Shown piece after piece: positions 5,403-62,105 of a stretch of 64,000 nucleotides of DNA. Under the pieces are notes generated by a model. That model saw only the letters and a list, made by a program, of their open reading frames with translations, searched no databases and was not told the DNA's origin. Each line of letters starts with the position of its first letter. Position 1 is the first letter of the stretch. A program made the translations under genes and the position numbers. Where the stretch lies: positions 1 through 64,000 of IMG/VR virus record IMGVR_UViG_3300043449_002710; one strand, 5' to 3'.

Positions 5403-5542
5403 TTGGGTACTTCCTTGTGAAGCGGGGGTTTGGCGAGGATTTTAATTTCCAGCCGTGTTCCGCTTACAAATCCAGAATACTATAAATATAAATATATTCA
5501 AACAAAAAATATCAAGAATTATTATTCAATGAAATTGAGATA

Positions 5543-7272: not shown

Positions 7273-7355
7273 ACATTCACTCCTATTTATATTTATAATA
7301 GGAGTAAATATACTTATAATCAAATCTTTTATTTATTATGCTTAAACTATCGTTT

Positions 7356-22748: not shown

Positions 22749-23507
22749 ATGATTCGTCAAACCACACCCGCCCAAATTACGGATAAAATCAAAAACTTCT
22801 GCCAGGGCGTGGCTCAGAAAGAACCTTTTTACGTCAAAGTAAAGCCCTCGGGAAAACACCAGGAATGCTTCTTCAACTGCTCTAGGTTCCTATCCACCCA
22901 CCCAGGGTACAAAATCGTTTTTGGTTGGATCATTTGGGAAGCTCCTTGGATATTAGAAATGGAGCAGCACTCTATTATTCAAACTCCAGATGGCGATTTT
23001 TTGGATGTAACGCCACAAGCAGACGGCGAGGAATCCATCTTGTTCCTACCCGATGACTCAGCAGCCCCCTCTTTCATACTCGTGGTGGATCGGCCCGATG
23101 ACATTGTCACTTGCCGTAAAGCCAACATCACATTCCCTAAGACACAGTCAAAAACCCAATGGGTCATTACTAACGTGGGGCTCTCTCAATTCAAAAATTC
23201 TCTTTCTGGGCTGAACGTTCAAGGGCCAAAATCACTCGAAGAAATTAATGCCACCTATGATTCTTTGTCGGGGCGGAAGCTGAACACCTTTTCAGATACG
23301 CTCGAAGACATCGTCTCGATGCTAGAAGGAGGCTCGGTGCTAGGAGGCCGCCACAGCATCAAAAAAACAAACCAGCCGCTTTCTTGTCTCAGCCATTTGT
23401 CGAACCCCAGCAAAGAAAAGCTGCCTAGAAATTCCCCTTGCCATTGTGGGAGCGGTGAAAAATATAAAAAATGCTGTCTCGAAAAAGATTTAAAGGGCTC
23501 AGTTTAA
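22749..23507 (+). CDS. SEC-C motif protein
   Basis: C-terminal RNSPCHCGSGEKYKKCC; N-terminal ECFFN...GWIIW...H...DVTP (transglutaminase/papain-like) domain. Confidence 0.85.
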   Translation: MIRQTTPAQITDKIKNFCQGVAQKEPFYVKVKPSGKHQECFFNCSRFLSTHPGYKIVFGWIIWEAPWILEMEQHSIIQTPDGDFLDVTPQADGEESILFLPDDSAAPSFILVVDRPDDIVTCRKANITFPKTQSKTQWVITNVGLSQFKNSLSGLNVQGPKSLEEINATYDSLSGRKLNTFSDTLEDIVSMLEGGSVLGGRHSIKKTNQPLSCLSHLSNPSKEKLPRNSPCHCGSGEKYKKCCLEKDLKGSV

Positions 23508-26500: not shown

Positions 26501-29500
26501 GTGAAAATACCTTGGCAGACTCGCTGCCAAAGTCTTGGTCGAACCCCAGTCTTTCTTGAGGACATCTCGGTCTTTGAACTGAAGGGGCAACACCTTCACG
26601 CGAAGATCCCCCGGGAGAAGCTTCTCCTCTTTCACTCTTTCCCAAATATCATCCGACACCGTGATATGGGGACGGTAGGTGGGATAGTCGTCCTTACGCA
26701 CAACTTCCAAGGCGTTGTGCATGTCCTCGATTCGAGAAGGCAAGCCCTTCAATTCAAGAACACGCACCTTCCCGTTTTGTTTGGAGTCAAACTCGACAGG
26801 CTCCCAAGTGAAGCTTGTGGGTGGGCTTAAGTCTTTACCTTTCAAGATCTCCTCGATCTTGTCTACTGTCACAGGCTCTTCGCCAAAGAACTTGACTGTG
26901 ATGTGCGCTTCATCCACGCCTTCCATCTCTACTGGGTAGTAGAGGAAAGAAGTGGTGTTGGCGTACTTGTCTCGGATCTCTTCTTTGGTTGCCTCTTCCA
27001 CTTTGGAAGCTTTTATCTTTTTGCTGACATCGACTAGCAAGACTTTTGGTGTCACCCCTAAGATGAAAGCCGCGTCCAAGCGAGTGTTTCCGCTCAAGAC
27101 CTGATAGCCCTCGGGGGTTTTTAAAACGATCGGGTAGGGAATAGGATCGTTGTTTTCAAACCCTTTCACAATCCGTTTCACGTCGCGAGGAAACGAGTAG
27201 CCAGAAACCAACTCTTCGAGTTCTTCAATCGAGTCCGTATGGCTTCTCATTCGAGTCTGGTGATCAAGATCTGGAGTCCAAGTAACGGCCTGGGATTTAT
27301 TGACGGACTTTTTAAAGTCCTCGATGTCTTCAAAGTATTCTGGAATCCATCCCTTTTTGACCTGCTTGATGACTTCCCATTCCCACTCTTGCTCGATCTG
27401 TTTTGTAGTGAGATTCACCCAGTTGGTGAATTCATAGGCCGCTGCCCCGAGCGATAAGCGGTAGACTTTAGAGTCTGGTTCATTTTCTTCTCTAGGGCCC
27501 CACTCAATGACATCTGGATTAAAGATGATGAGCTGGTCGGGCTCTCCACTATAGATAATTTCTTGATCATCTTCGATGCCATCGATCCCGAGATCTTTCC
27601 AAAACTGAGTGAATTTTTTTCTATCGTGGAAATAAGAGCGAAGGGTTGTAAACCAAAGGTAATCGCTAGGACCGTCCCCGAGCGCTTTTTGAATATCTTC
27701 TTCAGTTGGGTCATTGATGTTTCCGCCACTATTTTCAAGAAAGCTATTCCACTCGGAGATATCTTTTCTTTGCTTGGCGGCATTGAAAGCATCTAAACCT
27801 GTCTTGATTCCGGCTTTTTTCCAAATCTCCCACTTTTCAGTAGAGGTAAAACCACTGAGAAGTTTAATCTTGGTACCGGGCTTCAGCTTGGCATCCCAAC
27901 GGTATTTCTTGGCAGACCACTCGCTTACATCGATGTAAGTTCCCTTTTTGAAGAGATAGATTCCCTCGGGGTCAAAATAAATACGACCCGATTCCGAGTG
28001 AACACTTGGTATCTCTGGGTGATTGGAGACATGGAAATAGGGGTAATCCACGTCCTTGATTCCAGCGGTATTCTTCTGACTAGACGTAGCCAAATCGTCT
28101 TTTAAAACTTTTTTGAGCTTCAGGTTCTGAACGGTGGTCACATCAAAGACCACCTGATCTTCGTAGTCGGTGTTGTGGTAGGCTTTCACTGCATAAGGCA
28201 CCGTGAATTCAAAAAGATTGGGCCCGTATTTCAAAGACATTTCTTCAATATCTTTTTTGGTCTTGATATCTTTTTTCTCAAAAGCAAACGCTAGATCTCC
28301 GTGCCCAGCATACTCATGGTGAGTGAGTCCCAATCTTTCTGGTGCTTTTCCTTTGAACCCGGTTTTTAATACTTCATCTGGCTTTGCGGGGGTGAATCGA
28401 TAGAGGGTGGTTCTTCCTAAGATTTTAGGGTTTTCAAAGTAGACTAAAGACGAATCTTCATCTTCTTCCTTTTGTTGGATGTATTGCGTCTCAAAGTAGG
28501 CGAGTCTTTTTTGTCTTCTTTTTTCAGGGGAAAGCTTTTTCAGTTCTTCCAGATACTCTTCGTAATCCCAGTTAGCTTGGTGGAAATAAAGTTCGATATC
28601 TCCGTCGATCGTCTCGTCGTCTAAATTCTCGAATTCTTCTTTAGCCTCTTCCAGCCATTGCTTTTCGTTTTCTTGGCGGTCGGCCATGTAATAGAACGTT
28701 AAAAGCTCGGGGCTGTTTTTGAGTTTCTCTTCTGGTGATATTTTCTTGGCCGCCTCGATTTCCAAGTCGGCCCTGGCTTGCTTGGGCAATTCAATCTCAA
28801 GCTGAGTTTCCCCGGGCTTGAGAATCTGGATGGGTTCGATCTTGGCTCTAGGCTTTAATTCGAACTCGCGTTCGTTCTCAAAGTGGTCGTACCCTCTCCA
28901 GACAAGCTTTCTAAGAGTCTTTCCAAAATTGATGGATTGAAAGGGAACCCGAGCCTTGACGATCCAAAGAGGCAGATGCGAGTTTCTGCCTGAGTAGTTA
29001 TCGGCTTTGTGGTAGTCCCAGGTCCAATAAATGCCAAGCTTTTTAAAATCGATTGTGTCTGGGCTCTCTGCGCTGATCCCACGGTACAAGAGAACTGCAT
29101 CTCCGTCGAACTCGCCCGAGTATTCTAGCTCTTGCATCCAGCGCGGATAGTCTTCTTGGAAGGCTCGGTCCAAGACAAATTCTTTTTGGGCTTCCTTGTT
29201 TACTAAATTATCAGGCAGATCCTGCCAGTTCATCGTGTCGCTTAAGATCAAGTCTTGGACTTTTTTATCTCGCATCGCAGCCGCGAAATGCTCGTTTAAT
29301 TTGCCCAAGAAGGCCGCTTCGACGGGTATTAAGTTTGAAGTGATCTCCGCTTTAAAGTCTTCGTATGTGTCGTCATACCGGCACTTTAGAGCAACTAATT
29401 TCTCAAGAACAAATCTATTAACTTGTTGCCCGCGAGTGTCTCGGTAAATCCACTTCCCAAAAACGAACAAACGTAATGGGGTTTGGAATTTATTTAGCTT

Positions 29501-30859
29501 TATTCTAAAATATCCACGCTCGACAACACCTTCCAGCCGCGTTAAACCGGAAACTTGCTCAATATCTAATTTGGCTAGGTTCTTCGTAGATAGTGCCCCA
29601 GTTAATTCTTCGTGGCACTTGGCAATTTTTTTGCTGCTGTATTGTTCGCTACCCTTCAGATTCAGAGGTGGAAGCGGCGGTTGGAATAGACCCGTAAAGC
29701 TTTTTATAGCGAGCGAGGAGATCGTCGTAAACATCTTGTCCGAGGGCTTCGATGTAGGCTTGTGGGTTGGATACCATGCGGGCGTAACTTTCCCGGTCAT
29801 CGGTTTCCCATTGTCCGCTGAATTCTTTTTTGAATTCCTCGTCCAAGAGTCTATCGTATTTAGATTCATCTCTTGCCATACATCTCCTATGCTATCAAAG
29901 TTTATGCCGCTGTGCAACACGGGACTTGAGTCGTAACCAATTGGAACTAATTGTGTTTTATTTTCTACACGATTGGAGTCATCCGCCCAAACGGTATCCA
30001 TCGTTTTTTTGACAGTCTTCTCTAGCTCCTTCATGTCCATGGGCTTTTTATCCGCGCCCCGACCAAAGCGTTCGATCGATTCACCGACACTGTAATTAAA
30101 GCGGTGGCTGCCAGAGTAGTAGACGGATATCTCAGAGGGACGAGCCTGATTTAAATCGTGTGCTCTCGGGGATACCTTCCAGCTTGCATAATGGCCGGTG
30201 TAGGGCTTAGGACCATCGTAGACATGGACAATCCCTTCAAAGGTCTTCACACCCCATTCGGTTTTCCTTCGAGGCAAGACAAAATCGACTTTGCCATAGG
30301 GGGCGACCAATTCCTTGATCCGCTCCATGACCTTGATGGTATCCTCGTAACCCGTATCTTTGAGATCGATTCTTTTGACCACCTTGATTTTGGTCGGATC
30401 TAAAACCAAAAGCTGCTCTTCCCAAGCATGGATGACTTCGATGTCATCGAACACAGCGTCATAACCGAGATTACGCAGCGCCTTATTCCAGGCCCCTGCA
30501 CTTCGGTAGCCTTTCAAGATGAAATGATTCTTCATCAGCTCCCAAAACGAATCAATTGAGAGCGTGAATTCTTTCTCTGGGATTTCAATTTCAAGCTGCC
30601 TTAAGATTTCTTTAGCCTGATCCAAAGTCAATCGGCCCAAATCCAAGATTCGAAGCGATGGGTCAATCTCCACCTCAAACTTGTAGGGCATGACTTGCCA
30701 GAAGGGCGCAGGGTTGAAGTCACTAGGGAACAAATAGATCCCGGCAGGGTCTTGATGAAACCCCTTAGGATTGATTGTGACCTGGGGTACTTTGGAATAG
30801 TGGACCCAAATCTTATCGTTAGCGTGCTCTGAGAAGTCTGCAAAGGTGAGAGTAGCCAT
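23504..30859 (-). CDS. polyvalent protein, 2451 aa (multiple ART-like domains, two ParB-like, 2H phosphoesterase, GNAT, C-terminal NUDIX)
   Basis: PAGIYLF/PEGIYLF...G.D...DD units; LYRGI..IYWT..EREF; IYRGL..SSWT..ESEV; LFHGT; LSGNTRL and SDGHHRL; HITV twice; FRRQGLA; WGIPGG...ALKETEEEIG; AGGAG RBS. Confidence 0.88.
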   Translation of the reverse strand: MATLTFADFSEHANDKIWVHYSKVPQVTINPKGFHQDPAGIYLFPSDFNPAPFWQVMPYKFEVEIDPSLRILDLGRLTLDQAKEILRQLEIEIPEKEFTLSIDSFWELMKNHFILKGYRSAGAWNKALRNLGYDAVFDDIEVIHAWEEQLLVLDPTKIKVVKRIDLKDTGYEDTIKVMERIKELVAPYGKVDFVLPRRKTEWGVKTFEGIVHVYDGPKPYTGHYASWKVSPRAHDLNQARPSEISVYYSGSHRFNYSVGESIERFGRGADKKPMDMKELEKTVKKTMDTVWADDSNRVENKTQLVPIGYDSSPVLHSGINFDSIGDVWQEMNLNTIDSWTRNSKKNSADNGKPMTGKVTPAWYPTHKPTSKPSDKMFTTISSLAIKSFTGLFQPPLPPLNLKGSEQYSSKKIAKCHEELTGALSTKNLAKLDIEQVSGLTRLEGVVERGYFRIKLNKFQTPLRLFVFGKWIYRDTRGQQVNRFVLEKLVALKCRYDDTYEDFKAEITSNLIPVEAAFLGKLNEHFAAAMRDKKVQDLILSDTMNWQDLPDNLVNKEAQKEFVLDRAFQEDYPRWMQELEYSGEFDGDAVLLYRGISAESPDTIDFKKLGIYWTWDYHKADNYSGRNSHLPLWIVKARVPFQSINFGKTLRKLVWRGYDHFENEREFELKPRAKIEPIQILKPGETQLEIELPKQARADLEIEAAKKISPEEKLKNSPELLTFYYMADRQENEKQWLEEAKEEFENLDDETIDGDIELYFHQANWDYEEYLEELKKLSPEKRRQKRLAYFETQYIQQKEEDEDSSLVYFENPKILGRTTLYRFTPAKPDEVLKTGFKGKAPERLGLTHHEYAGHGDLAFAFEKKDIKTKKDIEEMSLKYGPNLFEFTVPYAVKAYHNTDYEDQVVFDVTTVQNLKLKKVLKDDLATSSQKNTAGIKDVDYPYFHVSNHPEIPSVHSESGRIYFDPEGIYLFKKGTYIDVSEWSAKKYRWDAKLKPGTKIKLLSGFTSTEKWEIWKKAGIKTGLDAFNAAKQRKDISEWNSFLENSGGNINDPTEEDIQKALGDGPSDYLWFTTLRSYFHDRKKFTQFWKDLGIDGIEDDQEIIYSGEPDQLIIFNPDVIEWGPREENEPDSKVYRLSLGAAAYEFTNWVNLTTKQIEQEWEWEVIKQVKKGWIPEYFEDIEDFKKSVNKSQAVTWTPDLDHQTRMRSHTDSIEELEELVSGYSFPRDVKRIVKGFENNDPIPYPIVLKTPEGYQVLSGNTRLDAAFILGVTPKVLLVDVSKKIKASKVEEATKEEIRDKYANTTSFLYYPVEMEGVDEAHITVKFFGEEPVTVDKIEEILKGKDLSPPTSFTWEPVEFDSKQNGKVRVLELKGLPSRIEDMHNALEVVRKDDYPTYRPHITVSDDIWERVKEEKLLPGDLRVKVLPLQFKDRDVLKKDWGSTKTLAASLPRYFHVTTEKAAKEILRNGFSHTRGAEWYDGKNRFSFSDDSILHDWFNYYHLFFELFSDEEVKELQKTLHDDDLSEQDRARFFRDVIKSHFGTDWTLMWVGRDKVYSGYGDTILEFFPTEKDIEIEDDGAGYTVFVRKEGKIPGSQFEILGKIPEDQDSDMDQGVPFSEIENEIILSSFNDLDNLDFFNPNKYNKGAVWTKNSNLIAKPSMNSSTKMLSMNTGLPTEISSKRSEPSIETCSLIQKNISKCTAKKITTSSSLVIESFYKGAVWTKKKNWLTKSSTKSLRNSQSLTPGISKKPFTDSNSLSSKQELFSSTGKPNTTLSSVVYATTATNKDNVLDNPKTHEEFKFENQITMRGDNDSIREGRAFVLLGDKPVGQLLYGAAWNKPGFLVSTDTYIEPEFRRQGLANALYVFVEKETGMKFAPNLSKSREGRLLWDQPNRPFGVQSSKSPTTREVAIDKIWPDKNNMEVAVDSLHKGMLAQTQDPIEVYPYKNKFVVSDGHHRLLQVIVNGDETVRVKVLPLDFKITTERLVKLQKGERYYGLDSSLENGWLIKRLSPTVQASFKEESSDYSDDIPSGEKEDINGISRHIINFFRSWDYWGNEKADQYSKYPEVEAFLSQYRPKAPVTIYRGLRASEGGHEGHLLRSLGLDTFEKKDVTYRDSRPSSWTTDLGWLKQSEFACDEICQKGLILEATVSPEQVLVDLNLIPEDLASLFDLRLEESEVILRPGSIPAKVIYLSEWKDGDRIHSSPAEDLVLELFHGTCNQNAASLLERGWNGKSPTGAHGGQSKYLYVTNEYDNALWFAQERGCNTVLKVKVKKSQLGVDPEDGIGPTVDDELNRETPAYLVVKTPLPAEAFSTADPFETLSSSEYEDEGHVGDFWGSQASGIMFRCQDDILLLKRSHWVMDPYTWGIPGGAVPVDPKGNPTDIKASALKETEEEIGMIPAYHDTGKKTVFQKGSFKYTTFLFEVAEKFNPILNNEHTDFAWVKIKEILGS
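25506..25703 (-). CDS. nested 65-aa gene (second of a nested pair), paralogue family G...YD.L
   Basis: Same shifted frame; leader TAAAGGCGCTGTATGGAC is identical to that of 25713..25922. Confidence 0.8.
   Translation of the reverse strand: MDEKEKLADQIIDKKLKELPEPDTRDFEKALHRLEQPEFKARIIQQHGQAEYDALVSGLRNHSNK
25713..25922 (-). CDS. nested 69-aa acidic gene, paralogue of 29649..29879
   Basis: YRDMLANPEKYIQMYGKENYD aligns with YARMVSNPQAYIEALGQDVYD; near-consensus promoter upstream. Confidence 0.85.
   Translation of the reverse strand: MDKKLKPHSEALDELLDKDVVDEYGLANRDILEEERAEYRDMLANPEKYIQMYGKENYDLVIAGHRELL
25934..25962 (-). promoter_or_regulatory. near-consensus sigma70 promoter embedded in the polyvalent CDS
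   Basis: TTGACT-N17-TATAAT, 11 nt upstream of the ATG at 25922. Confidence 0.85.
29649..29879 (-). CDS. nested 76-aa acidic gene
   Basis: AGGAG immediately upstream, own promoter, and paralogy to 25713..25922. Confidence 0.85.
   Translation of the reverse strand: MARDESKYDRLLDEEFKKEFSGQWETDDRESYARMVSNPQAYIEALGQDVYDDLLARYKKLYGSIPTAASTSESEG
29889..29917 (-). promoter_or_regulatory. internal sigma70-type promoter for nested gene 29649..29879
   Basis: TTGCAC-N17-TAGCAT with extended -10 TG. Confidence 0.7.
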
Positions 30860-30935
30860 CTCCTAAAAAATAACTCCAGGTGTTGGAATAAAATATGAAT
30901 ATAGCGGGGGCTTAACTACTGGCTTGGAGAAATTT

Positions 30936-31214
30936 ATGGAACGCACACTAGCTAACGTATTAGGTCAAAGAGTTGAACGTGAACGTCCTACTCGAATCAC
31001 AAAAGAAGAATTAAAATGCACAGTTGGATTTAATTCTTATTTAACCGTTTTTTCGATCCAATTAGTGCATCGATTTCCTGTCGTTACTGATTTAACTGGA
31101 ATTCCTTACGATGAAGTGCAAAAAATAGCTGATTTTTCTGCAGCAAGCTCTTTGATTGCTTTAGAAACTTGGGGGCGAGTGACTGAAGAGCAATACAAGC
31201 AGCAAGCAGCGTAA
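30936..31214 (+). CDS. hypothetical protein
   Basis: GGAG RBS; followed by a terminator. Confidence 0.65.
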   Translation: MERTLANVLGQRVERERPTRITKEELKCTVGFNSYLTVFSIQLVHRFPVVTDLTGIPYDEVQKIADFSAASSLIALETWGRVTEEQYKQQAA

Positions 31215-31218
31215 AATT

Positions 31219-31253
31219 TAGCGGAGATGGGAAACCGTCTCCGCTATTTTTTT
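31219..31253 (+). terminator. intrinsic terminator
   Basis: GCGGAGATGG-GAAA-CCGTCTCCGC followed by TATTTTTTT. Confidence 0.85.
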
Positions 31254-32020
31254 AATAGGGTCAGTATTAAAAGTTTTAACGCACACCAAAAACCAACTCT
31301 GCCTACCTGAATCAAATCCTCGCCGTGCGCGTAATCGAGCCAGTAGAGGCAAAAAAGGTTGACGTTTTGGTCAGGATAGCGGGGAAGTTTCCTTAGGTCC
31401 GTCTCAAACCCCATCTCTTTACTCTTAGAAGTCAGAACAAAACGTTTTTTATCAAATGTGTTTTTCCCAGAGAAATACTTTTCCACGTAGCGTTTGAAGA
31501 CTAGCTCCGCGATCTCCACATATTTTTTGGGGGGCTTAAGCTGATTGGCTTTGTCGCTCGGCCAAACCTGCGTGTAAAGATCCGTGAAGGTCCCAATGAT
31601 CGATGGCGTGGAGGAGATGTTGGTGTAATAATAAGAACCAAACTCTTTCCACTGGTAGTAACTCAGGTAGCTGTAAGGGATGCTTAAAAGATCCACCCCT
31701 TTGTTTTTGGTGATCAATACCAAACCAGCATGGATCACGACATCCGGTATGATTTGAAGAATGACGTTGTAAAAGAAACCGATGGCTTCATTTGTATTGT
31801 CATAGATCAAACAGATGTTTGCAGATTGAAAAAACTCGATCAGCTCAGTGCAAGAGATCTCGGGATCTAAAATACCGTAGGAGAGATTCCTTTTAGAAGA
31901 TTCGTTGATGTATTGTATTTCTTCTTTCAGCCAATTCAGTTCGGCTGATTTCATCCAGAGCCCCGGGCGGAATAAATAGTGTAGGGTGTAACCCTTGTAG
32001 CTTTTAGTTATCCGTTTCAC
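31244..32020 (-). CDS. conserved hypothetical protein, GNAT-like fold suspected
   Basis: RPGLW...VIHAGLVLI...LDY..GEDLIQVG pattern; overlaps the kinase stop. Confidence 0.6.
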   Translation of the reverse strand: MKRITKSYKGYTLHYLFRPGLWMKSAELNWLKEEIQYINESSKRNLSYGILDPEISCTELIEFFQSANICLIYDNTNEAIGFFYNVILQIIPDVVIHAGLVLITKNKGVDLLSIPYSYLSYYQWKEFGSYYYTNISSTPSIIGTFTDLYTQVWPSDKANQLKPPKKYVEIAELVFKRYVEKYFSGKNTFDKKRFVLTSKSKEMGFETDLRKLPRYPDQNVNLFCLYWLDYAHGEDLIQVGRVGFWCALKLLILTLLKK

Positions 32021-33188
32021 TCACCTGAAATAACAAGGGGCCGGTTGTGATTTTAATGATCGCACCGCCTTCAGGGTGATTTGCAAACTTCATTTTTTGA
32101 CCTCTTGCTTCCACAAGATTCTGAATCAGAAATAACCCAATTGAATTTCCCTGAGCCTTGGTGGTTTGAATCCATTTCCCAGAATTCAATTTTTGAATCT
32201 GCTCTTTTTGAAACCCATTTCCATTGTCTCGAATAAACAAACAACTGTCTTTAATACCGATCTCAATTCTGCTTGCCTTTATTTCCACGGCATTGATGAT
32301 CAGATTGTATAGAATTTTTGTGATCAAGTTTTTGTTTCCGACAACCACAGAATCCTTTTCAAGTACGATTTCCGCGCCTTGGAGCTGAGATCTCAATATG
32401 ATTTTTAAGCTCTCTAGAATCTCGGAGAGCTTAAAATTTTCGGTCGTATTGTATGGCTTACTCAGACGGTTGATCTCTTCGATATAGGCCAACAAAAACT
32501 TGGAATCTCGATATAAAATCTCTATCAATTTTTTATTGTTGTCGTTATTTTCTAATCTCTTTAACAAGAAAATGGCATTGATCGGTGAGGTTAAAAGATT
32601 TTTAAAGTCGTGAAGAATGAGACTAGAGTGACAACCGATGTCCAAGAATTTTTCTGCGAGCGCGTCTTTTTGCTTTCGGGTGATGCTAACAAAGTTGTAC
32701 CCGACAAAGGATAACAAGGTGGTGATAAGCACCCCGGCTGTGGCATCAAAGTGAAATTTACTAATAGCAGCAAGGTTAGTTGTTTCATAGACCGAAGCTG
32801 GGCTTAGAAAAATCATCGTAATCATTCCAGCCGCTGAGACGCCCATCGAAGGGTAAAAAACTTTTTTGGGGGCCATGAAAAAGATCCCAATCGGGATCAC
32901 AGCTTCCATGTAGGCCAAGTAGTAGCAAGGAAAATAATATTGACCGTGAATCGAATAAGCTGCAATCGTCAGTAAAAACCCCGGCAGATGCCATTGACGA
33001 TATTTTTTAAAATGGATTTGAACAATGATGACCAGACAAATGAACGCTGTTAAAACTCTCCCCAAAACATAAGAAAATCTCAAATAGTCTGGTAACTGGG
33101 GAGTATCCAAGAAAATCATGACCAGTGGTATGACAAGACCGAAATAAGTAACCGCTTTTAATGTTTTAGGTTCATAATCTAACATCAT
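32004..33188 (-). CDS. membrane sensor histidine kinase
   Basis: About 6 TM helices; H-box LHDFKN, N-box NLIINA, G1 DNGNG and G2 GNSIGL. Confidence 0.9.
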   Translation of the reverse strand: MMLDYEPKTLKAVTYFGLVIPLVMIFLDTPQLPDYLRFSYVLGRVLTAFICLVIIVQIHFKKYRQWHLPGFLLTIAAYSIHGQYYFPCYYLAYMEAVIPIGIFFMAPKKVFYPSMGVSAAGMITMIFLSPASVYETTNLAAISKFHFDATAGVLITTLLSFVGYNFVSITRKQKDALAEKFLDIGCHSSLILHDFKNLLTSPINAIFLLKRLENNDNNKKLIEILYRDSKFLLAYIEEINRLSKPYNTTENFKLSEILESLKIILRSQLQGAEIVLEKDSVVVGNKNLITKILYNLIINAVEIKASRIEIGIKDSCLFIRDNGNGFQKEQIQKLNSGKWIQTTKAQGNSIGLFLIQNLVEARGQKMKFANHPEGGAIIKITTGPLLFQVSETDN

Positions 33189-33239
33189 TTATATTTATAA
33201 AATACCTAACTTTATTACTCAAGAAAATTAAGGGAATTT

Positions 33240-33977
33240 ATGTTTTCTAGAAATTGGTTGTTTATTTCCGAGGCGACCCAAAAAACTCTTTCAGACCAGA
33301 TGGTTCTGATCGTGGGGACTGGGCTTGGCAGTAAAATAGCGGAGTTAGCTGTAAGAACAGGCTTTAAAAAATTCATTATTGCGGATGGGGATCAAGTAGA
33401 ATTGTCGAATTTAAACCGACAGAATTTCAATCTAGAATCCGTAGGGCAAAACAAAGCGGCGGCCACCAAAGAGGCCCTGCTGAAAATCAACCCAGACGCT
33501 CAGATTCTCGATTTGCCTGCTTTCTTCGACCAAGAGGATCTAGAGCGTTGGGTTCCGAGAGCCAACTTCGTTATCAACACGATTGACTTCGAAAACGACA
33601 GCTTCCGGCACTGCAGCCAGATTTGTCGTAAGTACGAAAAGATTGAACTCTTCCCTACCAATTTAGGCTTTGGGGGGTCTTTGGTCGCCTTCAATTCGAA
33701 GAGCCCTACTTTCAGTGAGTTCTTTAAGACCGAGGATTCCGTTGTCTTGAAAAAGAAGATTCTAGAGTATTTGATCCTCAACAAAAAGGCCCCGACCTAC
33801 ATGAAGGAGGCTTACTCTCGATACCTTCTTCAGAAAGTGGGTAAACCCGACCCACAACTTGGGATCGGCGCAGCCATGACCTCGGCTTTGACGGTAACCA
33901 CGATGGTCCGAGTTGTGTCTGGGGAAACCATTAAAACATTTCCCCAGGATTTTTATTACGTGGATGGCTCCTATTAG
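33240..33977 (+). CDS. ThiF/E1-like adenylyltransferase
   Basis: GTGLGS, DGDQVELSNLNRQ, GQNKA and INTID motifs; no C-terminal CxxC pair. Confidence 0.9.
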   Translation: MFSRNWLFISEATQKTLSDQMVLIVGTGLGSKIAELAVRTGFKKFIIADGDQVELSNLNRQNFNLESVGQNKAAATKEALLKINPDAQILDLPAFFDQEDLERWVPRANFVINTIDFENDSFRHCSQICRKYEKIELFPTNLGFGGSLVAFNSKSPTFSEFFKTEDSVVLKKKILEYLILNKKAPTYMKEAYSRYLLQKVGKPDPQLGIGAAMTSALTVTTMVRVVSGETIKTFPQDFYYVDGSY

Positions 33978-35227
33978 AGCAGCCCGATTTTAGTCAGGGT
34001 GTTCATCAATAGTGCATTCGATCCCACCGAAGAGATCTTGTAGGTGTAGTTATACATATTGCGGTAGGAGTAGCTTCTGCCCGCATAGGTGCCCACACCT
34101 CTGGCTTTTCGCACGTAAGCCATTTTGGCTGGGCCGATCTGCTTGTTGAACTCATCCATCATCCGAGAGGCTGCAGAATCCAAACCAGACGCCCGGCTCA
34201 CGCTCAAAGTGACGCTTTGGCCCGAGAAGGAGAAATCGAGTTCAGTTTCCAGAATGCTTTGAGCCTGAAGCGCATACCAGCCAGCGGCCAAAAGCACCAA
34301 AGGCTGAAAGTCATCTGGGCATTGATCCATAATGTAAGTCGTGGTCGGGTAGGAAAGATTCACCATCCGCAAGCCCTGCGAGATGTACTCCAAGAGATCG
34401 GAGTCTTCATACGCTTGAAGACGGCCCAAGCGCTTTTGAAACTTGTCGATTAGCATTCTGAGATAGGTGATCAGAGGCAAGATGTTGGTGGAAACGGCAA
34501 TCAGAATTTGAAACTGGGTGACTGGGATCGAGAACTCGGTTTCTTGAATCTTCCAAAGCGGAAGGTAGGCCGTATTCTTTTGGGTGACCCCCTGAGCCAC
34601 GTCTTTGTAGATGACATAGCTGTCGCCATCTCGCCCGATCTTTAATCCGCCTTGTAAGGGCCCTGGCGGCTGCGTGGAGTCGTAAAAATCCACGACCACA
34701 GGGTTATCCTCATTCCCGCGCACGATCATCTTAAAATCGACTCTGTAAGGGATGACCGACGAGCGGTACATGACGCGGACGGCATCGCCCGCCATCGTCA
34801 TATACTTGAGTTCTCTGCTCTGGCTTTGAGTGATGGCCGTATCCCTGACATCAAACTCTTCGACAAACGAGACTTGGAAATTCTCCGCCGTCAGCATGAC
34901 CCATTCGATTCGGTAGCGCGAATCGTTAGCTGAGAGGGGTTGGCCTTGCCCCTCGTTTCCATAGCGCTGGGGGGCCTGCTGAAAGTAAGAGAGCGGGGCA
35001 TCTTTAGGAACTAAGAAATCAGCAGCATAGTTGCCCGCACTTCTCAGAGTCCCAGTGCCTGTTTGAATTGGAGTGCCTTCCAAGTTGTAGATTGTGTAGG
35101 CCGGGTAGCTTGGGTCGATAGGAACAAGAGCCTCGGTCTTGGCTTCATCAGCAAAAAACCCCACACGAAACTGAGTGGTTTCGCCGCGAGTTAAAATCCT
35201 AGGTGTTTGTTGCGAATCGGTTGCCAT
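33974..35227 (-). CDS. putative virion neck/head-tail adaptor protein
   Basis: Beta-rich N-domain; C-terminal LRMLID...DSDLLEYI...FSFSGQSVTLSVSR resembles adaptor proteins (inference). Confidence 0.55.
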   Translation of the reverse strand: MATDSQQTPRILTRGETTQFRVGFFADEAKTEALVPIDPSYPAYTIYNLEGTPIQTGTGTLRSAGNYAADFLVPKDAPLSYFQQAPQRYGNEGQGQPLSANDSRYRIEWVMLTAENFQVSFVEEFDVRDTAITQSQSRELKYMTMAGDAVRVMYRSSVIPYRVDFKMIVRGNEDNPVVVDFYDSTQPPGPLQGGLKIGRDGDSYVIYKDVAQGVTQKNTAYLPLWKIQETEFSIPVTQFQILIAVSTNILPLITYLRMLIDKFQKRLGRLQAYEDSDLLEYISQGLRMVNLSYPTTTYIMDQCPDDFQPLVLLAAGWYALQAQSILETELDFSFSGQSVTLSVSRASGLDSAASRMMDEFNKQIGPAKMAYVRKARGVGTYAGRSYSYRNMYNYTYKISSVGSNALLMNTLTKIGLL

Positions 35228-35265
35228 GAGCCCCTCAAATTCTGTCGAATTAGTAAAAATCTTTC

Positions 35266-35997
35266 GTGTCTGACTCGTCTGCTTATATAAAAATAATCGA
35301 CAAGCTCGACCAGTACGAGGTTTTATCCGTATTGGAGCGCAAGGACTTGCTTTTGGATATCCAAAAGGTAGCCGAGCTGCATTTGGAACCCGAGGTTATT
35401 GAGCCTGATTCGGTTTGTCCGGTAACCAAGCAAGAGGTCATCATCCCGTGTCAGCTCACCCAATGCCGCTATTGGGTGGAACATCAGTGGACTAAAAACT
35501 GTGCTTTGAATTTTATGGCATCCCAAGAAGTCGATCAGCTCTCAGTTGAGCAAGTGAGCTTCTTGTATCGGAAGTCCGTGGAGCGAGTGAACTCCATCTA
35601 TAATCGCTCGTTCAAGGTCTTGCAGCGCCACTACTTGCGAGACATGCTTAGGAACAAAGGGGTGCCTCAGTTTTCTTTTGTTCCAGGGTTTTGTGTCTCT
35701 TGCCAAAGCAAACTCTGGGAAGAAGATCTAGCCGATGGGAACCTCAGGCTGACCGACCAATTCGGCTATTGCTCGGTGGAGTGCAAGAAACAGCTACCCC
35801 CGCAATACTTTGAGATCGAGCATTTCTTTCAAGCCGATTTTTATGAGATCGTTAAGCTCGGGTCGGAGCTTTTTAACTTTTACTATCTAGAAGACATCTT
35901 GGGATTTCAGCCCAACGTGCTACGCAATCGCTTAGAAAAACTTCGAGACTCTTCCGAATCTAACGACAATAAAAAGAAAAAAAAGAAAGCCTTTTAA
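35266..35997 (+). CDS. Cys-rich protein with a sigma-region-4-like HTH
   Basis: LSVEQVSFLYRKSVERVNSIYNRSFKVL; several CxxC and YCSVEC. Confidence 0.55.
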   Translation: MSDSSAYIKIIDKLDQYEVLSVLERKDLLLDIQKVAELHLEPEVIEPDSVCPVTKQEVIIPCQLTQCRYWVEHQWTKNCALNFMASQEVDQLSVEQVSFLYRKSVERVNSIYNRSFKVLQRHYLRDMLRNKGVPQFSFVPGFCVSCQSKLWEEDLADGNLRLTDQFGYCSVECKKQLPPQYFEIEHFFQADFYEIVKLGSELFNFYYLEDILGFQPNVLRNRLEKLRDSSESNDNKKKKKKAF

Positions 35998-36059
35998 GCC
36001 TGCACGTTTTTTATCAGCCAGTGCAAAGAGTCCCATTGTGCTGGGGTCATTTCCTGGTG

Positions 36060-36130
36060 ACTCGACGCAGTTAAGCCTTGTAAGGTAAGCTCGCTACGTT
36101 TTTAATGTCATCATTCTGAATCTTGGACAT
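36060..36130 (-). pseudogene. degenerate 5' fragment paralogous to 14749..15201
   Basis: Reads MSKIQNDDIKNVA then, after a 1-nt shift, ELTLQGLTAS; the intact gene reads MSKIQNEDIKSVTELQSQGLTAS. Confidence 0.7.
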
Positions 36131-36171
36131 AAGCTAATGCAAATACTTCAAACCCCTATTATTTTCATAGT

Positions 36172-37572
36172 ATGAAGCGCTCCAAGAAACTGTACGTTGC
36201 CAGAAGAAGCTCCTCCGTATTAAGTCGATTCATGCTCTCCCCGCGCAAACGCTTCGTGCGGTCTTCTTTGTACGAGGGCTTTCCTACCTTAGCTGAAGTG
36301 ATCTTGGCCCGTAATGTTGCCAATACAACAGAGATTGAAAAGTTTCTGAATGACTTCCACGTGGAAGACTTGCCCAACTTGAATGAGTGGCTCGATTCCA
36401 CCATGCGCAAATACCTGATCAATAAATATGACAGAACCCGAGGTTATACCCCTAAGGCTTCTGACCCAGATTGGATGCAAGGCAAGACGGATCTTGAAAC
36501 GGTCATCTTGGACAACGCGCTCACGGATAAGCTTCAGCATTTAGTAGATTTTTTAAAGAACAAAATGACCACTGAACCTAACTTCAACCTCAAGTCTTTC
36601 CAGGCCGAAGAGGCCATGAAGCAATCTCAAGAATGGCTCGATCGACTCAAAAAGAAAAAGAGCGAAGAAGAGCAAGAGGGTGTGGATTACAAAGTCCTGA
36701 TGGACTTAGGCAACGGCTGGAAGTGGGTGGATCTGATTTCTCAGAACGCCTTAACCCGCGAAGGTCAGAAAATGGGCCATTGCGTAGGCGGTTATTGGGA
36801 TCGGGTCAAAACCGGAAGAGAAAAGATCTTCTCACTCAGGGATTCTGATAACCAACCTCATGCCACTATCGAATACGTCCCAGGCCAAGCTTCCATCGAT
36901 CAGATCAAAGGCAAACAGAACAAAGGCGTGATCCAAGAGTACATGCCTTATGTTTTGGCGTTCTTGAAGTCCCCGCCTGTCAAAGTCAAAAAGATCAACG
37001 ATTACGAATTGAACTTAAACGGTCTTTTGAAAACCAATGATGGATACATTTCAGTCAGTTTGATTCCAGAAGGAACCATCTTAGATCAGAACTTGGATCT
37101 CAAGAAATTTGATGACATTAAGCTTCCCAAGAATCTCACCATCAAAGGCGATCTCATTGTTCCATCGGGTCAGGAATCCTTGCCTGAAAACTTAACTGTC
37201 ACGGGCACTTTGAACTTGGCAAAAACTCTGATTCGAGAACTCCCCACGGGCATGAAAGTGGGCTCTTTGAATCTCTTTGGCTTGAGCAGGCTGACTTCCT
37301 TGCCCGCAGACATTCAGATCACCAAGGATCTCAACGCAGAGTTCTCAGGTTTGGAGTCGATCCCGCCTCTGAAATTAAAAGGCGATCTCGTTTTAAGTGA
37401 CACAGATATTCAGTCTCTCCCAGAAGGTTTGAGCGTGGGTGGCGAACTCGATATCATGAACACCGCGATCAAGACTCTGCCTAAGAAGTTGAAAGTAGGA
37501 ACCGCCATCTTCGTGGATGACGTGGATGCTTTTGAAGGGGTTTCACCAGCTCTGAAAGCGCTTTTACACTAA
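36172..37572 (+). CDS. PcfJ-like domain plus leucine-rich-repeat-like protein
   Basis: EGQKMGHCVG...IFSLRD...PHATIE...QIKGKQN, followed by LPxxLxVxGxLxL repeats. Confidence 0.85.
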   Translation: MKRSKKLYVARRSSSVLSRFMLSPRKRFVRSSLYEGFPTLAEVILARNVANTTEIEKFLNDFHVEDLPNLNEWLDSTMRKYLINKYDRTRGYTPKASDPDWMQGKTDLETVILDNALTDKLQHLVDFLKNKMTTEPNFNLKSFQAEEAMKQSQEWLDRLKKKKSEEEQEGVDYKVLMDLGNGWKWVDLISQNALTREGQKMGHCVGGYWDRVKTGREKIFSLRDSDNQPHATIEYVPGQASIDQIKGKQNKGVIQEYMPYVLAFLKSPPVKVKKINDYELNLNGLLKTNDGYISVSLIPEGTILDQNLDLKKFDDIKLPKNLTIKGDLIVPSGQESLPENLTVTGTLNLAKTLIRELPTGMKVGSLNLFGLSRLTSLPADIQITKDLNAEFSGLESIPPLKLKGDLVLSDTDIQSLPEGLSVGGELDIMNTAIKTLPKKLKVGTAIFVDDVDAFEGVSPALKALLH

Positions 37573-40811: not shown

Positions 40812-40985
40812 ATGAAACAAAAATACCCTGCTTTAGCAAAAGTTTTAGCCCAGGCTTCTATTGAGATAGACGGCAAGCCCTACTCTCTTGAGCAGTTAAA
40901 TGCGATGGATGAGATTGAAGTAAGGGGAGTTTTCGTTTGCCTTCTTGGAAACCCCCAGGTTAAATCGGCTCCCCATGCCACCTAA
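40812..40985 (+). CDS. 57-aa ORF beginning with the shared tag (MKQKYPALAKVLAQAS); possibly truncated
   Basis: Below the ORF-track cutoff; translated manually. AAGGG RBS. Confidence 0.65.
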   Translation: MKQKYPALAKVLAQASIEIDGKPYSLEQLNAMDEIEVRGVFVCLLGNPQVKSAPHAT

Positions 40986-47065: not shown

Positions 47066-47230
47066 CTTTTCTCACATCTTCTTCTGTGAACTGCTTGCGG
47101 TTATGGGAGCAATAAAAGTTTTCACCCACTTCTTTGGGTGCGCCTTCAAGCGAAGTAAGTCGATTGGAAGAACAAAAACTGGGCTACTAGATTGTGCTTT
47201 AGGCGACATTCTGTAATCCTCTCAGGGGTT
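47066..47230 (-). ncRNA. putative TnpB omegaRNA/right end with adjacent guide
   Basis: Non-coding stretch after tnpB with hairpin CACCCA-AAGAAG-TGGGTG, ending GCAGTTCAC at 47086 as in IS200/IS605-type right ends; boundaries inferred. Confidence 0.45.
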
Positions 47231-59835: not shown

Positions 59836-59951
59836 ATTTTTTCTCTGCCCAATTTTTAGACGGCCTAGGAATAATTGTCCCAGGTTTCATATACTTAAAA
59901 ATAATTACTTTTTCTGTTGGTAGTAGAACTATTTATATTTATAATAGAAGC

Positions 59952-61375: not shown

Positions 61376-61410
61376 TTGACTCTCGTTACATTTATATTTA
61401 TATTTATAAT
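61376..61410 (+). promoter_or_regulatory. early-type promoter with ATTTAT repeats
   Basis: TTGACT followed by ATTTATATTTATATTTATAAT, upstream of a run of small genes. Confidence 0.7.
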
Positions 61411-62064: not shown

Positions 62065-62105
62065 TAAATATATTTATATTGATAATATCTTGATAAGGAG
62101 TCGCT

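What the first reader, a model, noticed from the sequence alone, without database searches (positions are those of the whole stretch)
30936..33977. Phage-borne ThiF adenylyltransferase, membrane histidine kinase and GNAT-like gene: possible signal synthesis/sensing cassette
Seen: an AT-rich 6-TM histidine kinase gene overlapping a GNAT-like conserved gene is transcribed divergently (51-nt gap containing the ATTTATATTTATAA motif) from a ThiF enzyme that lacks a zinc-binding tail. No response regulator is in the window. Inference: the enzymes make a small acyl/adenylated or peptide signal read by the kinase, either for phage communication or to hijack a host two-component system. Alternatively it is a captured host island.
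Basis: inference. Interest (0 to 1): 0.6.

Follow-up and report, generated by a model that had tools for sequence, protein, structure and literature searches.

The report
Phage copy of ThiF-GNAT-kinase cassette
A large freshwater phage carries three intact genes (a new GNAT-fold enzyme, a six-helix membrane histidine kinase and a minimal ThiF-type adenylating enzyme) that form a conserved but unstudied signalling cassette in Bdellovibrionota bacteria, so the phage has probably captured host signalling machinery whose chemistry is still unknown.

Summary
Window 31244-33977 encodes three genes:
- a 258-aa protein with no family hit but a confident GNAT fold;
- a 394-aa histidine kinase with six TM helices and an intact catalytic core, overlapping the GNAT gene by 17 nt;
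- a divergently transcribed 245-aa ThiF enzyme with all ATP/Mg residues, no zinc CxxC pairs and no conserved Cys.

The window is the start of a 223-kb IMG/VR virus record.

The genes do co-occur elsewhere.
- GNAT-fold and ThiF genes are paired in Bdellovibrionota, Vibrio and Flammeovirga.
- In 12 of 12 strong-match Bdellovibrionota species loci, a histidine kinase sits beside the pair.
- The nearest bacterial relatives have a four-gene cassette: GNAT, ThiF, 6TM kinase and REC-kinase.
- The phage GNAT gene nests inside that bacterial clade.
- An otherwise unrelated 10.9-kb contig has the same three-gene layout.

The phage lacks the REC-kinase gene. It does encode one CheY-like receiver, 125 kb away.

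Functional coupling of the enzymes to two-component signalling, and host origin, are well supported. That the enzymes make the ligand the kinase reads is only one of two comparably likely models. The other is that the kinase pathway controls the enzymes as an output.

This is a good lead to an uncharacterised module, not a demonstrated phage communication system.

The parts
31244..32020 (-). GNAT-fold enzyme of an undescribed family (258 aa, GTG start). It has an ~80-residue insertion between beta6 and beta7 that holds most of the invariant residues. The pyrophosphate-loop position reads K-N-x-G-x-D.
   Evidence: There are no family hits. The word search found 38 proteins at E<=0.001, 34-61% identical among the 34 aligned. 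The AF2 model has pLDDT 94. Fold matches are all GNATs: Foldseek and VIA-wide, Z 9-11.2.
32004..33188 (-). Sensor histidine kinase, 394 aa. A six-helix membrane sensor (aa 1-~170, nt ~32680-33188) is joined directly to the DHp and CA domains (nt 32004-~32680). There is no periplasmic, HAMP or PAS domain.
   Evidence: Pfam HATPase_c. Alignments A3 and A6 show invariant H193, D194, K196, N295, N299, D321, N322 and G351, plus sensor residues G82, Q83, Y89 and D148. The sensor aligns with the 6TM bundles of membrane adenylyl cyclases and ImcA: Z 14.5 (rmsd 2.7, 196 aligned), 13.5 (3.1, 174) and 13.2 (3.1, 163).
33189..33239 (.). A 51-nt divergent intergenic region. The genome-specific motif ATTTATATTTATAA lies at 33187-33200 and is oriented toward ThiF.
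   Evidence: Sequence. Motif enrichment is 7 copies against 0.01 expected. Genome-wide copies mostly lie 4-40 nt upstream of start codons on the same strand. The motif is absent from the equivalent gap of L061.
33240..33977 (+). Minimal ThiF/E1-type adenylyltransferase, 245 aa. Only the Rossmann-type adenylation domain is present. There is no zinc site, no catalytic Cys, no rhodanese domain, no E2 domain and no peptide-clamp domain.
   Evidence: PF00899 at 1.8e-33. Invariant residues are R4, G26, G28, D49, D51, N59, R60, Q61 and K72; N113 and D116 are near-invariant. The nearest solved structures are 9EGB/9EGC/9EGD, matched over the full length at E 1.4e-30.
31219..31246 (.). A 12-bp GC-rich hairpin between the convergent GNAT gene and the 92-aa ORF. 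It overlaps the GNAT stop codon. A run of seven T follows on the + strand and TTTT on the - strand, so it is a likely terminator for both.
30936..31214 (+). It has a GGAG six nt upstream of the ATG and the terminator hairpin five nt after its stop. It has no homologue in any fetched cassette locus, so it is probably not part of the cassette.
   Evidence: (GC3 0.25, unlike its neighbours; no tblastn hits).

Best explanation
This is a signalling cassette of bacterial (Bdellovibrionota) origin carried by a jumbo phage.

SHOWN
- The GNAT-fold protein and a Cys-less minimal ThiF enzyme form a conserved gene pair.
- In Bdellovibrionota the pair always lies beside a histidine kinase.
- In the phage's closest bacterial relatives the unit has four genes: GNAT, ThiF, a 6TM kinase and a REC-HisKA-HATPase relay protein.
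- The phage keeps the first three, all with intact catalytic residues. ThiF sits behind a phage-specific promoter-like motif.

INFERRED (mechanism I commit to)
- ThiF uses ATP to adenylate a carboxylate.
- The GNAT-fold enzyme performs an acyl transfer onto an amine, giving a small amphiphilic N-acyl product.
- The hexahelical membrane sensor has conserved polar residues inside the bundle. Its design matches CqsS-type quorum receptors and adenylyl-cyclase membrane anchors. It binds that product or a related membrane-borne cue.
- The kinase then phosphorylates or dephosphorylates the host's REC-kinase relay protein, or the phage's own CheY-like receiver.
- This lets the phage read or impose a host signalling state during infection.

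My likelihoods for the layers
- Conserved cassette of host origin: about 0.85.
- Enzymes functionally tied to two-component signalling: about 0.75.
- The enzymes' product is the kinase's ligand: about 0.3.
For: Co-occurrence
- Four-gene cassettes occur in L003, L004/5, L006/7, L041-L043 and the contig carrying P0006.
- The GNAT-ThiF pair is adjacent in Pseudobacteriovorax, Vibrio coralliilyticus and Flammeovirga.
- A kinase lies next to the pair in 12 of 12 strong-match species loci. Pfam confirmed four representative kinases: three from those loci (L044, L045, L050) plus L064.
- L061 has the same GNAT<-HK<-|->ThiF layout at 54%, 48% and 60% identity, with no other similarity to the phage.

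Origin
- The phage gene nests in a 27-row cassette clade, SH-aLRT 99.
- Named relatives are Oligoflexia, Bacteriovoracaceae and Bdellovibrionia.

Intact enzymes.

Sensor
- Six TM helices run into DHp with no other domain.
- The fold resembles adenylyl-cyclase 6TM anchors. A published domain swap showed these share the 6TM design of the lipid-autoinducer receptor CqsS (PMC4821796).

GNAT-fold enzymes include autoinducer synthases; RpaI matched at Z 9.4.

Assembly: an independent Logan contig of 73.7 kb spans the cassette and both flanks without differences.
Against: - Kinases beside the pair carry three unrelated sensor domains: the 6TM type, a soluble 220-aa N-terminal type and another multi-TM type. 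That fits a link to the kinase pathway better than one shared ligand.
- The pair occurs without a kinase in Vibrio and Flammeovirga.
- More distant members of the 6TM kinase family are ordinary kinase/OmpR pairs with no ThiF or GNAT.
- The cassette holds no exporter and no DNA-binding regulator.
- The phage ThiF belongs to a different ThiF subfamily (22-25% identity) from the ThiF in the cassettes whose GNAT is closest. The trio is therefore mosaic.
- The GNAT fold match is generic, no closer to signal synthases than to sugar or ribosomal-protein acetyltransferases.
- No substrate, product, donor or phosphotransfer partner has been identified.
- The adjacency counts include related genomes and are not independent events. 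I estimate about 4-6 independent contexts.
Confidence: 0.4

Rival explanations
1. Output model. The kinase pathway controls the two enzymes, which are the effector and not the signal source. ThiF and GNAT modify a cellular target such as a tRNA base, a protein or a lipid head group. The phage uses a membrane-sensing kinase to time that modification.
For: - The pair is a self-contained unit that also exists without kinases.
- Different sensor domains are swapped in beside the same pair, as expected if different inputs drive one output.
- The nearest solved relative of the cassette-type ThiF is the tRNA-modifying TcdA, E 2e-18.
- Top GNAT fold matches are sugar-nucleotide and ribosomal-protein acyltransferases.
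Against: - The cassette has no transcription-factor response regulator. The REC-kinase protein has no DNA-binding domain, so the route from kinase to enzymes is unknown.
- The TcdA match covers only the common N-terminal half.
Confidence: 0.3
2. The enzymes covalently modify the signalling proteins themselves. This would be E1-like adenylation plus acyl transfer onto the kinase or a receiver domain. The analogy is Cap2 priming of CD-NTases in CBASS, or acetylation of CheY.
For: - Linkage follows the kinase core and not any one sensor domain.
- ThiF shows generic similarity to Cap2 E1 domains.
- Several bacterial GNAT homologues carry disordered C-terminal tails ending in -KAA or -QAA, a possible E1 substrate end.
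Against: - There is no E2 domain, no JAB protease and no conserved Cys for a thioester.
- The phage GNAT protein lacks the tail.
- Kinase C-termini are not conserved.
Confidence: 0.1
3. Passenger DNA. The three genes are a recently captured host fragment with no role in the phage life cycle.
For: - The locus has lower GC than its surroundings: 0.40-0.42 against about 0.46.
- The fourth cassette gene is missing.
- No other IMG/VR contig carries the GNAT or ThiF family.
- A transposase gene lies 13 kb away.
Against: - All three ORFs are intact, with every catalytic residue kept at 48-60% identity to the nearest relatives. That is long divergence under purifying selection.
- The same trio in the same layout recurs in an unrelated contig.
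- ThiF lies behind a motif shared with other genes of this phage.
- A terminator closes the operon.
Confidence: 0.1
4. RiPP or ubiquitin-like pathway. ThiF activates the C-terminus of a peptide or small protein (as MccB, PaaA, GrcB or ThiF/ThiS do), and the GNAT enzyme decorates or detoxifies the product.
For: - ThiF-like adenylyltransferases make microcin C, pantocin A and thiolactone peptides. Some of these clusters sit beside quorum-sensing genes or contain acetyltransferases (PMC12250964).
- MccB and PaaA appear among the sequence matches, E 1e-8 to 2e-6.
Against: - At 245 aa the enzyme has no N-terminal peptide-clamp/RRE domain. Matches to MccB and PaaA cover only the Rossmann core.
- No conserved intergenic small ORF of 15 aa or more exists in 16 cassette loci.
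- There is no transporter, no GG-ended beta-grasp gene and no conserved Cys.
- Peptides under 15 aa were not examined.
Confidence: 0.07

Closest known systems
CqsA/CqsS (Vibrio CAI-1) and LqsA/LqsS (Legionella) alpha-hydroxyketone quorum sensing
   Same: An autoinducer-synthase gene lies beside a histidine kinase whose only sensor is a six-helix membrane bundle joined directly to the DHp helix. The phage sensor model superposes on the adenylyl-cyclase 6TM anchors (Z 13.2-14.5). A published domain swap shows those anchors share the CqsS design (PMC4821796).
   Different: - The synthase there is one PLP-dependent acyl-CoA transferase. Here it would be ThiF plus a GNAT-fold enzyme.
- CqsS is a hybrid kinase feeding LuxU/LuxO. 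Here the relay partner is a separate REC-kinase protein, and the phage lacks it.
- Sequence homology to CqsS was not tested.
- Z values of this size can arise from helical-bundle geometry alone.
ThiF/MoeB/E1 adenylyltransferase superfamily (ThiF, MoeB, TcdA, MccB, PaaA, Cap2) and the unpublished structures 9EGB/9EGC/9EGD
   Same: The Rossmann-type ATP site is fully conserved (GxGxxG, DxD, NRQ, K72, D116). The length matches TcdA and ThiF. There is a full-length match to the 264-aa 9EGB-D protein, E 1.4e-30.
   Different: - No zinc tetra-Cys site, catalytic Cys or rhodanese domain.
- No ThiS/MoaD partner gene, peptide clamp or E2 domain.
- All NCBIfam equivalog scores are far below their cut-offs.
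- I found no paper describing 9EGB-D.
GNAT acyltransferase superfamily (for example FdhC, RimJ/RimI, NatD; LuxI-type AHL synthases share the fold)
   Same: The core beta-alpha fold matches, with Z up to 11.2 over 164-176 residues. All of the listed top hits are GNATs. There is a loop at the CoA-pyrophosphate position.
   Different: - No sequence-profile match to any GNAT Pfam family.
- At 258 aa it has an ~80-residue insertion and two extra N-terminal strands.
- The loop reads K-N-x-G-x-D in place of Q/R-x-x-G-x-G/A.
- The acyl donor is unknown.
Phage-encoded communication and host-signalling hijack (arbitrium peptides; phage receptors for host autoinducers)
   Same: A phage carries a sensor, and possibly a signal-making enzyme.
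   Different: - Arbitrium uses a secreted peptide and an intracellular receptor.
- Here the parts are a two-component kinase and two small-molecule-type enzymes taken from the host lineage.
- No signal has been shown.
- Kinase-like families already exist in PHROGs (phrog_857, phrog_10912), so a phage kinase alone is not unprecedented.

Membership tests
ThiF/E1 adenylyltransferase superfamily (PF00899) | Profile match above the curated cut-off, with the nucleotide-binding GxGxxG loop | tested here: met
   The score is 116.1 bits against a cut-off of 28.1. G26, G28 and G30 are invariant or near-invariant.
ThiF/E1 adenylyltransferase superfamily (PF00899) | Catalytic Arg/Asn-Arg-Gln, Lys and Mg-binding Asp residues | tested here: met
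   R4, D49, D51, N59, R60, Q61 and K72 are invariant, and D116 is near-invariant, in 54 sequences.
ThiF/MoeB proper (sulfur-carrier activating enzymes) | Structural zinc site of two CxxC pairs, and (for ThiF) a catalytic Cys | tested here: not met
   The protein has only C125 and C129 (CxxxC). No Cys column is conserved across both subfamilies.
ThiF/MoeB proper (sulfur-carrier activating enzymes) | Partner beta-grasp protein ending in Gly-Gly encoded nearby, and an equivalog-level score | tested here: not met
   No conserved small ORF exists in 16 loci. The best NCBIfam equivalog scores 89.5 bits against a cut-off of 159.
HisKA-type sensor histidine kinase | Phospho-acceptor His box plus the N, G1 and G2 boxes of the ATP-binding domain | tested here: met
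   H193-D-F-K-N; N295 and N299; D321-N-G-N-G; G351. All lie in invariant columns. HATPase_c scores 43.2 bits against a cut-off of 26.4.
HisKA-type sensor histidine kinase | HisKA profile above the gathering score | tested here: inconclusive
   The score is 19.3 bits against a cut-off of 26.9. The model shows a two-helix DHp hairpin, 139-212 and 216-243.
Classical two-component system (kinase with cognate regulator) | Response-regulator gene adjacent to the kinase gene | tested here: not met
   There is no receiver domain in the window. The only one in the 223-kb record lies 125 kb away. The bacterial cassettes have a REC-HisKA-HATPase gene instead.
GNAT superfamily | GNAT core fold | tested here: met
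   The AF2 model has pLDDT 94. 124 solved chains score Z>=8, and all 50 listed are GNATs. Foldseek agrees.
GNAT superfamily | Sequence-profile membership and the Q/R-x-x-G-x-G/A CoA-binding motif | tested here: inconclusive
   There is no Pfam or NCBIfam hit. The loop at 105-110 reads K-N-K-G-V-D, with N106 invariant and G108 near-invariant. CoA binding was not tested.
LuxI-type acyl-homoserine-lactone synthase | Autoinducer-synthase profile match, or a specific structural closeness | tested here: not met
   There is no Pfam hit. The AHL synthase RpaI ranks 43rd at Z 9.4, below many ordinary acetyltransferases.
MccB/PaaA-type RiPP adenylyltransferases | N-terminal peptide-clamp (RRE) domain and an adjacent precursor peptide gene | tested here: not met
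   The 245-aa protein aligns only to residues ~110-225 of MccB. No conserved small ORF of 15 aa or more was found. Shorter peptides were not examined.
CBASS Cap2 / E1-E2 defence proteins | E1 fused to an E2 domain, with CD-NTase and effector genes nearby | tested here: not met
   PADLOC matches cover only ThiF residues ~10-120, against models of about 430-780 positions. No other cassette protein matches PADLOC.
CqsS/LqsS-type 6TM quorum receptors | Six-helix sensor joined directly to DHp | tested here: met
   This is the topology of the AF2 model. The fold resembles adenylyl-cyclase 6TM anchors.
CqsS/LqsS-type 6TM quorum receptors | Sequence homology to CqsS and binding of an alpha-hydroxyketone | not tested
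   No CqsS sequence was available through the tools. The Vibrio genome behind L065 is not held.

The most novel reading that the evidence does not exclude
The phage runs its own small-molecule signalling circuit. A ThiF plus GNAT 'synthase' of a chemistry not seen in any known autoinducer pathway makes a membrane-active signal. The phage's 6TM kinase detects it. This would allow phage-phage or phage-host communication through a two-component kinase, in a phage that probably infects Bdellovibrionota.
Probability: 0.12. Interest if true: 0.85.

Novelty: new variant of a known kind. Interest (0 to 1): 0.55.

Why it matters
Three things would matter if this holds up.

1. It defines an uncharacterised enzyme pair. 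The GNAT-fold family has no Pfam model. Its partner is a Cys-less minimal ThiF, for which a solved but apparently unpublished structure exists. The pair is conserved across at least three phyla and is genetically tied to histidine kinases in Bdellovibrionota. That gives a concrete handle on an unknown piece of signalling or modification chemistry.

2. It is an example of a jumbo phage keeping a complete membrane sensor kinase together with its associated enzymes, while dropping the relay partner. That suggests the phage plugs into a host phosphorelay.

3. The nearest relatives of all three genes point to Bdellovibrionota (Oligoflexia, Bacteriovoracaceae) as donor and possibly as host. To my knowledge, few phages of these bacteria have been described.

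Tried and rejected
- Complex prediction of ThiF with the GNAT-fold protein gave no verdict (score 0.00, controls not run). It counts neither for nor against binding.
- Four scans of IMG/VR found no other viral contig with the family: single proteins, the GNAT alignment and the ThiF alignment. blastn of the locus against GenBank phages found nothing.
- Terminase profiles PF17289, PF03237 and PF03354 were not found in the record. PHROG scans of 20 large ORFs gave replication and recombination genes and one transposase, but no structural genes. The viral nature therefore rests on IMG/VR/CheckV, a helicase whose best hits are jumbo phages and a tail-fibre-like gene.
- No paper mentions 9EGB, 9EGC or 9EGD. 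No paper links ThiF, GNAT and histidine kinase neighbourhoods.
- The HMM profile of the GNAT family found no solved structure by sequence.
- The first alignment was too diverse for the genome-contig scan; a narrower one worked.
- A search for conserved small ORFs gave only alternate-frame artefacts inside the large genes.
- Rfam found nothing in 30000-36500.
- The 6TM sensor profile found nothing in the Flammeovirga genome. The Vibrio and Pseudobacteriovorax genomes are not held.
- The only sequencing run holding the locus is a freshwater metagenome that may be its source. There is no RNA run, so expression is untested.
- The 92-aa ORF at 30936-31214 was considered as a ThiF substrate because it ends in -QAA. 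I rejected it as a cassette member because no cassette locus has a homologue.
- I did not run the large representative-protein search. The word search and genome searches already gave relatives for all three proteins.


Full report
WHAT IS THERE

The window is the first 64 kb of a 223,260-bp linear IMG/VR virus record with a CheckV completeness of 81%.

| Coordinates | Strand | Size | Identity |
|---|---|---|---|
| 30936-31214 | + | 92 aa | small ORF, unknown |
| 31244-32020 | - | 258 aa | GNAT-fold protein |
| 32004-33188 | - | 394 aa | histidine kinase |
| 33240-33977 | + | 245 aa | ThiF |

The flanking genes do not belong to the unit. One is a 2451-aa protein with a C-terminal NUDIX domain (23504-30859). 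The other is a 417-aa protein with a weak 'head-tail connector' PHROG match (33974-35227). An independently assembled 73.7-kb Logan contig from a freshwater metagenome spans 29800-35500 without a single difference, so the junctions are not the artefact of one assembler. That run may be the source sample.

THE THREE PROTEINS

ThiF
- It matches PF00899 at 1.8e-33.
- In an alignment of 54 relatives the ATP/Mg site is invariant or nearly so: R4, G26, G28, D49, D51, N59-R60-Q61, K72 and D116.
- No cysteine is conserved and there are no CxxC pairs.
- Every NCBIfam equivalog score is far below its cut-off.
- The best solved relatives are the 264-aa entries 9EGB/9EGC/9EGD, matched over the whole length at E 1.4e-30. 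I found no publication for them.

Kinase
- It has a significant HATPase_c domain and a sub-threshold HisKA match.
- Its H, N, G1 and G2 boxes fall in invariant columns, so it does not look catalytically dead.
- The AF2 model (pLDDT 82) has six TM helices, and the last continues directly into the DHp helix.
- The membrane domain carries conserved polar residues. G82, Q83, Y89 and D148 are conserved across the wider set. Y40, R44, Y78 and H81 are also conserved in the nine closest sequences.
- The membrane domain superposes on the six-helix anchors of membrane adenylyl cyclases and on ImcA: Z 14.5 (rmsd 2.7, 196 aligned), 13.5 (3.1, 174) and 13.2 (3.1, 163).
- The tool warns that helical bundles reach such values easily. 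This is a resemblance, not proof of homology.

GNAT-fold protein
- The 258-aa protein matches no Pfam, NCBIfam, PHROG or PADLOC model.
- Its AF2 model has pLDDT 94.
- Every listed top structural match is a GNAT acyltransferase, with Z up to 11.2. The Atlas search agrees.
- Its first 22 residues are conserved in homologues and form two strands of the fold. The GTG at 32020 is therefore the start, and the 17-nt overlap with the kinase gene is real.

DO THE GENES BELONG TOGETHER?

Yes. The word search found 38 proteins at E<=0.001, including the window's own gene call; the 33 relatives aligned are 34-61% identical to the GNAT-fold protein.

- On long bacterial contigs they lie in a four-gene cassette. 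Its genes are the GNAT-fold protein, ThiF (~266 aa), a ~400-aa 6TM kinase homologous to the phage kinase over its full length, and a ~360-aa REC-HisKA-HATPase protein.
- Named records are Oligoflexia, Bacteriovoracaceae and Bdellovibrionia MAGs.
- In a sample of 401 Bdellovibrionota species genomes, 29 carry the family.
- In all 12 strong-match loci, ThiF is in the same cluster and a kinase gene lies directly beside the pair. Pfam confirmed three representative kinases from those loci (L044, L045, L050) plus the L064 kinase.
- Among eight weaker, paralogous matches the linkage decays: one is adjacent, two have ThiF about 4 kb away and five have none.
- The phage ThiF belongs to a second ThiF subfamily. 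Its members in Pseudobacteriovorax, Vibrio coralliilyticus and Flammeovirga each also sit next to a GNAT-fold homologue. The enzyme pair is therefore the core unit and spans at least three phyla.
- A 10.9-kb metagenome contig (L061) has the phage's exact layout, GNAT<-kinase<-|->ThiF, at 54%, 48% and 60% identity. Nothing else on it resembles the phage.
- A 5.3-kb contig (L063) has ThiF, a kinase and an OmpR-type regulator, and it begins only 60 nt before ThiF.

ORIGIN

- In a tree of 51 family members the phage protein groups with L061 and P0005. Together they nest inside a 27-row clade of bacterial cassette genes, SH-aLRT 99.
- One close neighbour, P0006, lies in a bacterial four-gene cassette.
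- The locus is somewhat AT-richer than the phage average.
- The phage has no homologue of the REC-kinase gene.
- Its only receiver domain is a 113-aa CheY-like protein at 157540-157881 with the usual acidic pocket, Thr and Lys. It lies between a Toprim gene and a tail-fibre-like gene.

HOW IT PROBABLY WORKS

Two layers are well supported:
- the cassette is of bacterial origin and has been kept intact in the phage;
- the enzyme pair is functionally tied to two-component signalling.

The chemistry is inference. It is attractive for four reasons:
- the sensor is a bare hexahelical bundle with buried polar residues;
- this is the design of the lipid-autoinducer receptor CqsS, which was shown to be interchangeable with an adenylyl-cyclase anchor (PMC4821796);
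- in that system the synthase gene is likewise adjacent;
- GNAT-fold enzymes include autoinducer synthases.

Three observations weigh against it:
- Kinases beside the pair carry three unrelated sensor domains, one of them soluble.
- The pair exists without kinases in two other phyla.
- More distant members of the 6TM kinase family are ordinary kinase/OmpR pairs with no such enzymes.

These facts fit equally well a model in which the kinase pathway controls the enzymes as an output. I put the signal model at about 0.3 and the output model at about 0.3. Modification of the signalling proteins themselves, a neutral passenger, and a peptide or ubiquitin-like pathway each get about 0.1 or less.

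The peptide route is disfavoured for three reasons. ThiF lacks a peptide-clamp domain. There is no conserved small ORF. There is no transporter.

One detail may matter for the phage. The three phage-clade kinases (the window, L061 and L062) read H-D-F-K-N at the phospho-acceptor site, whereas the bacterial cassette kinases read H-D-x-K-G. In HisKA kinases the E/D-x-x-T/N motif after the His is associated with phosphatase activity (general knowledge of the family, not tested here). The phage kinase might therefore act mainly to dephosphorylate a host relay protein.

REGULATION

- The 14-nt motif in the divergent gap occurs 7 times in the window (one mismatch allowed) against 0.01 expected, and 10 times in the genome.
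- Copies mostly lie 4-40 nt upstream of start codons on the same strand, here facing ThiF.
- The motif is absent from the equivalent gap in L061.
- I read it as a promoter or operator element of this phage, which means ThiF has been wired into the phage's own programme.
- A 12-bp hairpin at 31219-31246 closes both the GNAT-kinase operon and the convergent 92-aa ORF.

COMPARISON AND NOVELTY

The parts belong to known superfamilies (E1/ThiF, GNAT, HisKA kinases). The cassette fails the defining tests for ThiF/MoeB proper, MccB-type RiPP enzymes, Cap2, LuxI synthases and a classical kinase-regulator pair (see the membership table). It works most like a synthase-plus-6TM-receptor system of the Cqs/Lqs kind, with different enzymes.

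I found no description of the GNAT-ThiF pair or of its kinase linkage in the searchable literature. A comparative survey of 224 jumbo phages does not mention such a system. Kinase-like families do exist in PHROGs.

I rate it a new variant of a known kind, with moderate interest. The conserved, unstudied module is the real finding. The phage communication reading is possible but unproven.

CAVEATS

- Viral identity rests on IMG/VR/CheckV, phage-type replication genes and a tail-fibre-like gene. No terminase or capsid gene was recognised.
- Adjacency counts include related genomes. I estimate about 4-6 independent contexts.
- No expression data exist.

Noticed in passing
window 5480-5493, 7285-7298, 33187-33200, 59931-59944, 61390-61409, 62072-62085; also G000:C1 143280-143299 and 170212-170225: The AT-rich motif ATTTATATT(T/G)ATAA, usually preceded by ATAT and followed by T, recurs 10 times in the genome. 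Most copies lie a few to 40 nt upstream of start codons on the same strand. It is a likely promoter or operator of this phage. Some downstream genes would have very short or no leaders.
   Followed up: partly
window 30936-31214 (+) and hairpin 31219-31246: A 92-aa ORF has a good Shine-Dalgarno sequence and a strong terminator, but GC3 of only 0.25 against 0.45-0.62 in its neighbours. It has no homologue in any fetched locus. It ends in -KQQAA.
   Followed up: partly
alignment A1 (bacterial homologues P0011, P0012, P0015, P0017, P0020, P0021, P0023, P0026): Many bacterial GNAT-fold homologues carry a variable, low-complexity C-terminal tail that ends in -KAA, -QAA, -KVA or -KSA. The phage protein lacks the tail. 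It could be a degradation tag or a substrate end for an E1-like enzyme. This is unexplained.
   Followed up: no
window 40945-45039 (+); G000:C1 95171-97549 (+) and 149931-153035 (+): The family-A DNA polymerase is interrupted by an intein with a LAGLIDADG endonuclease. A UvsX-like recombinase also carries a LAGLIDADG insert, and so does a 1034-aa protein. The genome is rich in inteins or homing endonucleases.
   Followed up: no
window 16323-21260 (-) and 23504-30859 (-): Two giant proteins are present: one of 1645 aa with an RNase_T exonuclease plus a classical GNAT domain, and one of 2451 aa with a C-terminal NUDIX domain. They resemble the multidomain 'polyvalent' proteins described in jumbo phages and conjugative elements. 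A PcfJ-like protein lies at 36172-37572.
   Followed up: no
window 47199-48248 (-): A transposase-like gene (phrog_506, 2.6e-25) lies inside the phage replication region, 13 kb from the cassette.
   Followed up: no
alignment A3, column of H193+4: The phage-clade kinases (window, L061, L062) have Asn four residues after the phospho-acceptor His, giving H-D-F-K-N. The bacterial cassette kinases have Gly there. The D-x-x-N form is the one linked to phosphatase activity in HisKA kinases.
   Followed up: no
G000:C1 66000-98000: Nine of ten large ORFs in this block have no PHROG match at all. No terminase Pfam profile matches anywhere in the record. The phage is very distant from described phages; its helicase is under 30% identical to that of phage G.
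   Followed up: partly
L044-L049 (Bdellovibrionota species genomes): The kinase beside the ThiF-GNAT pair in this group is a 465-aa protein with a soluble ~220-aa N-terminal domain that matches no Pfam family. It is a second uncharacterised sensor domain linked to the same enzymes.
   Followed up: no
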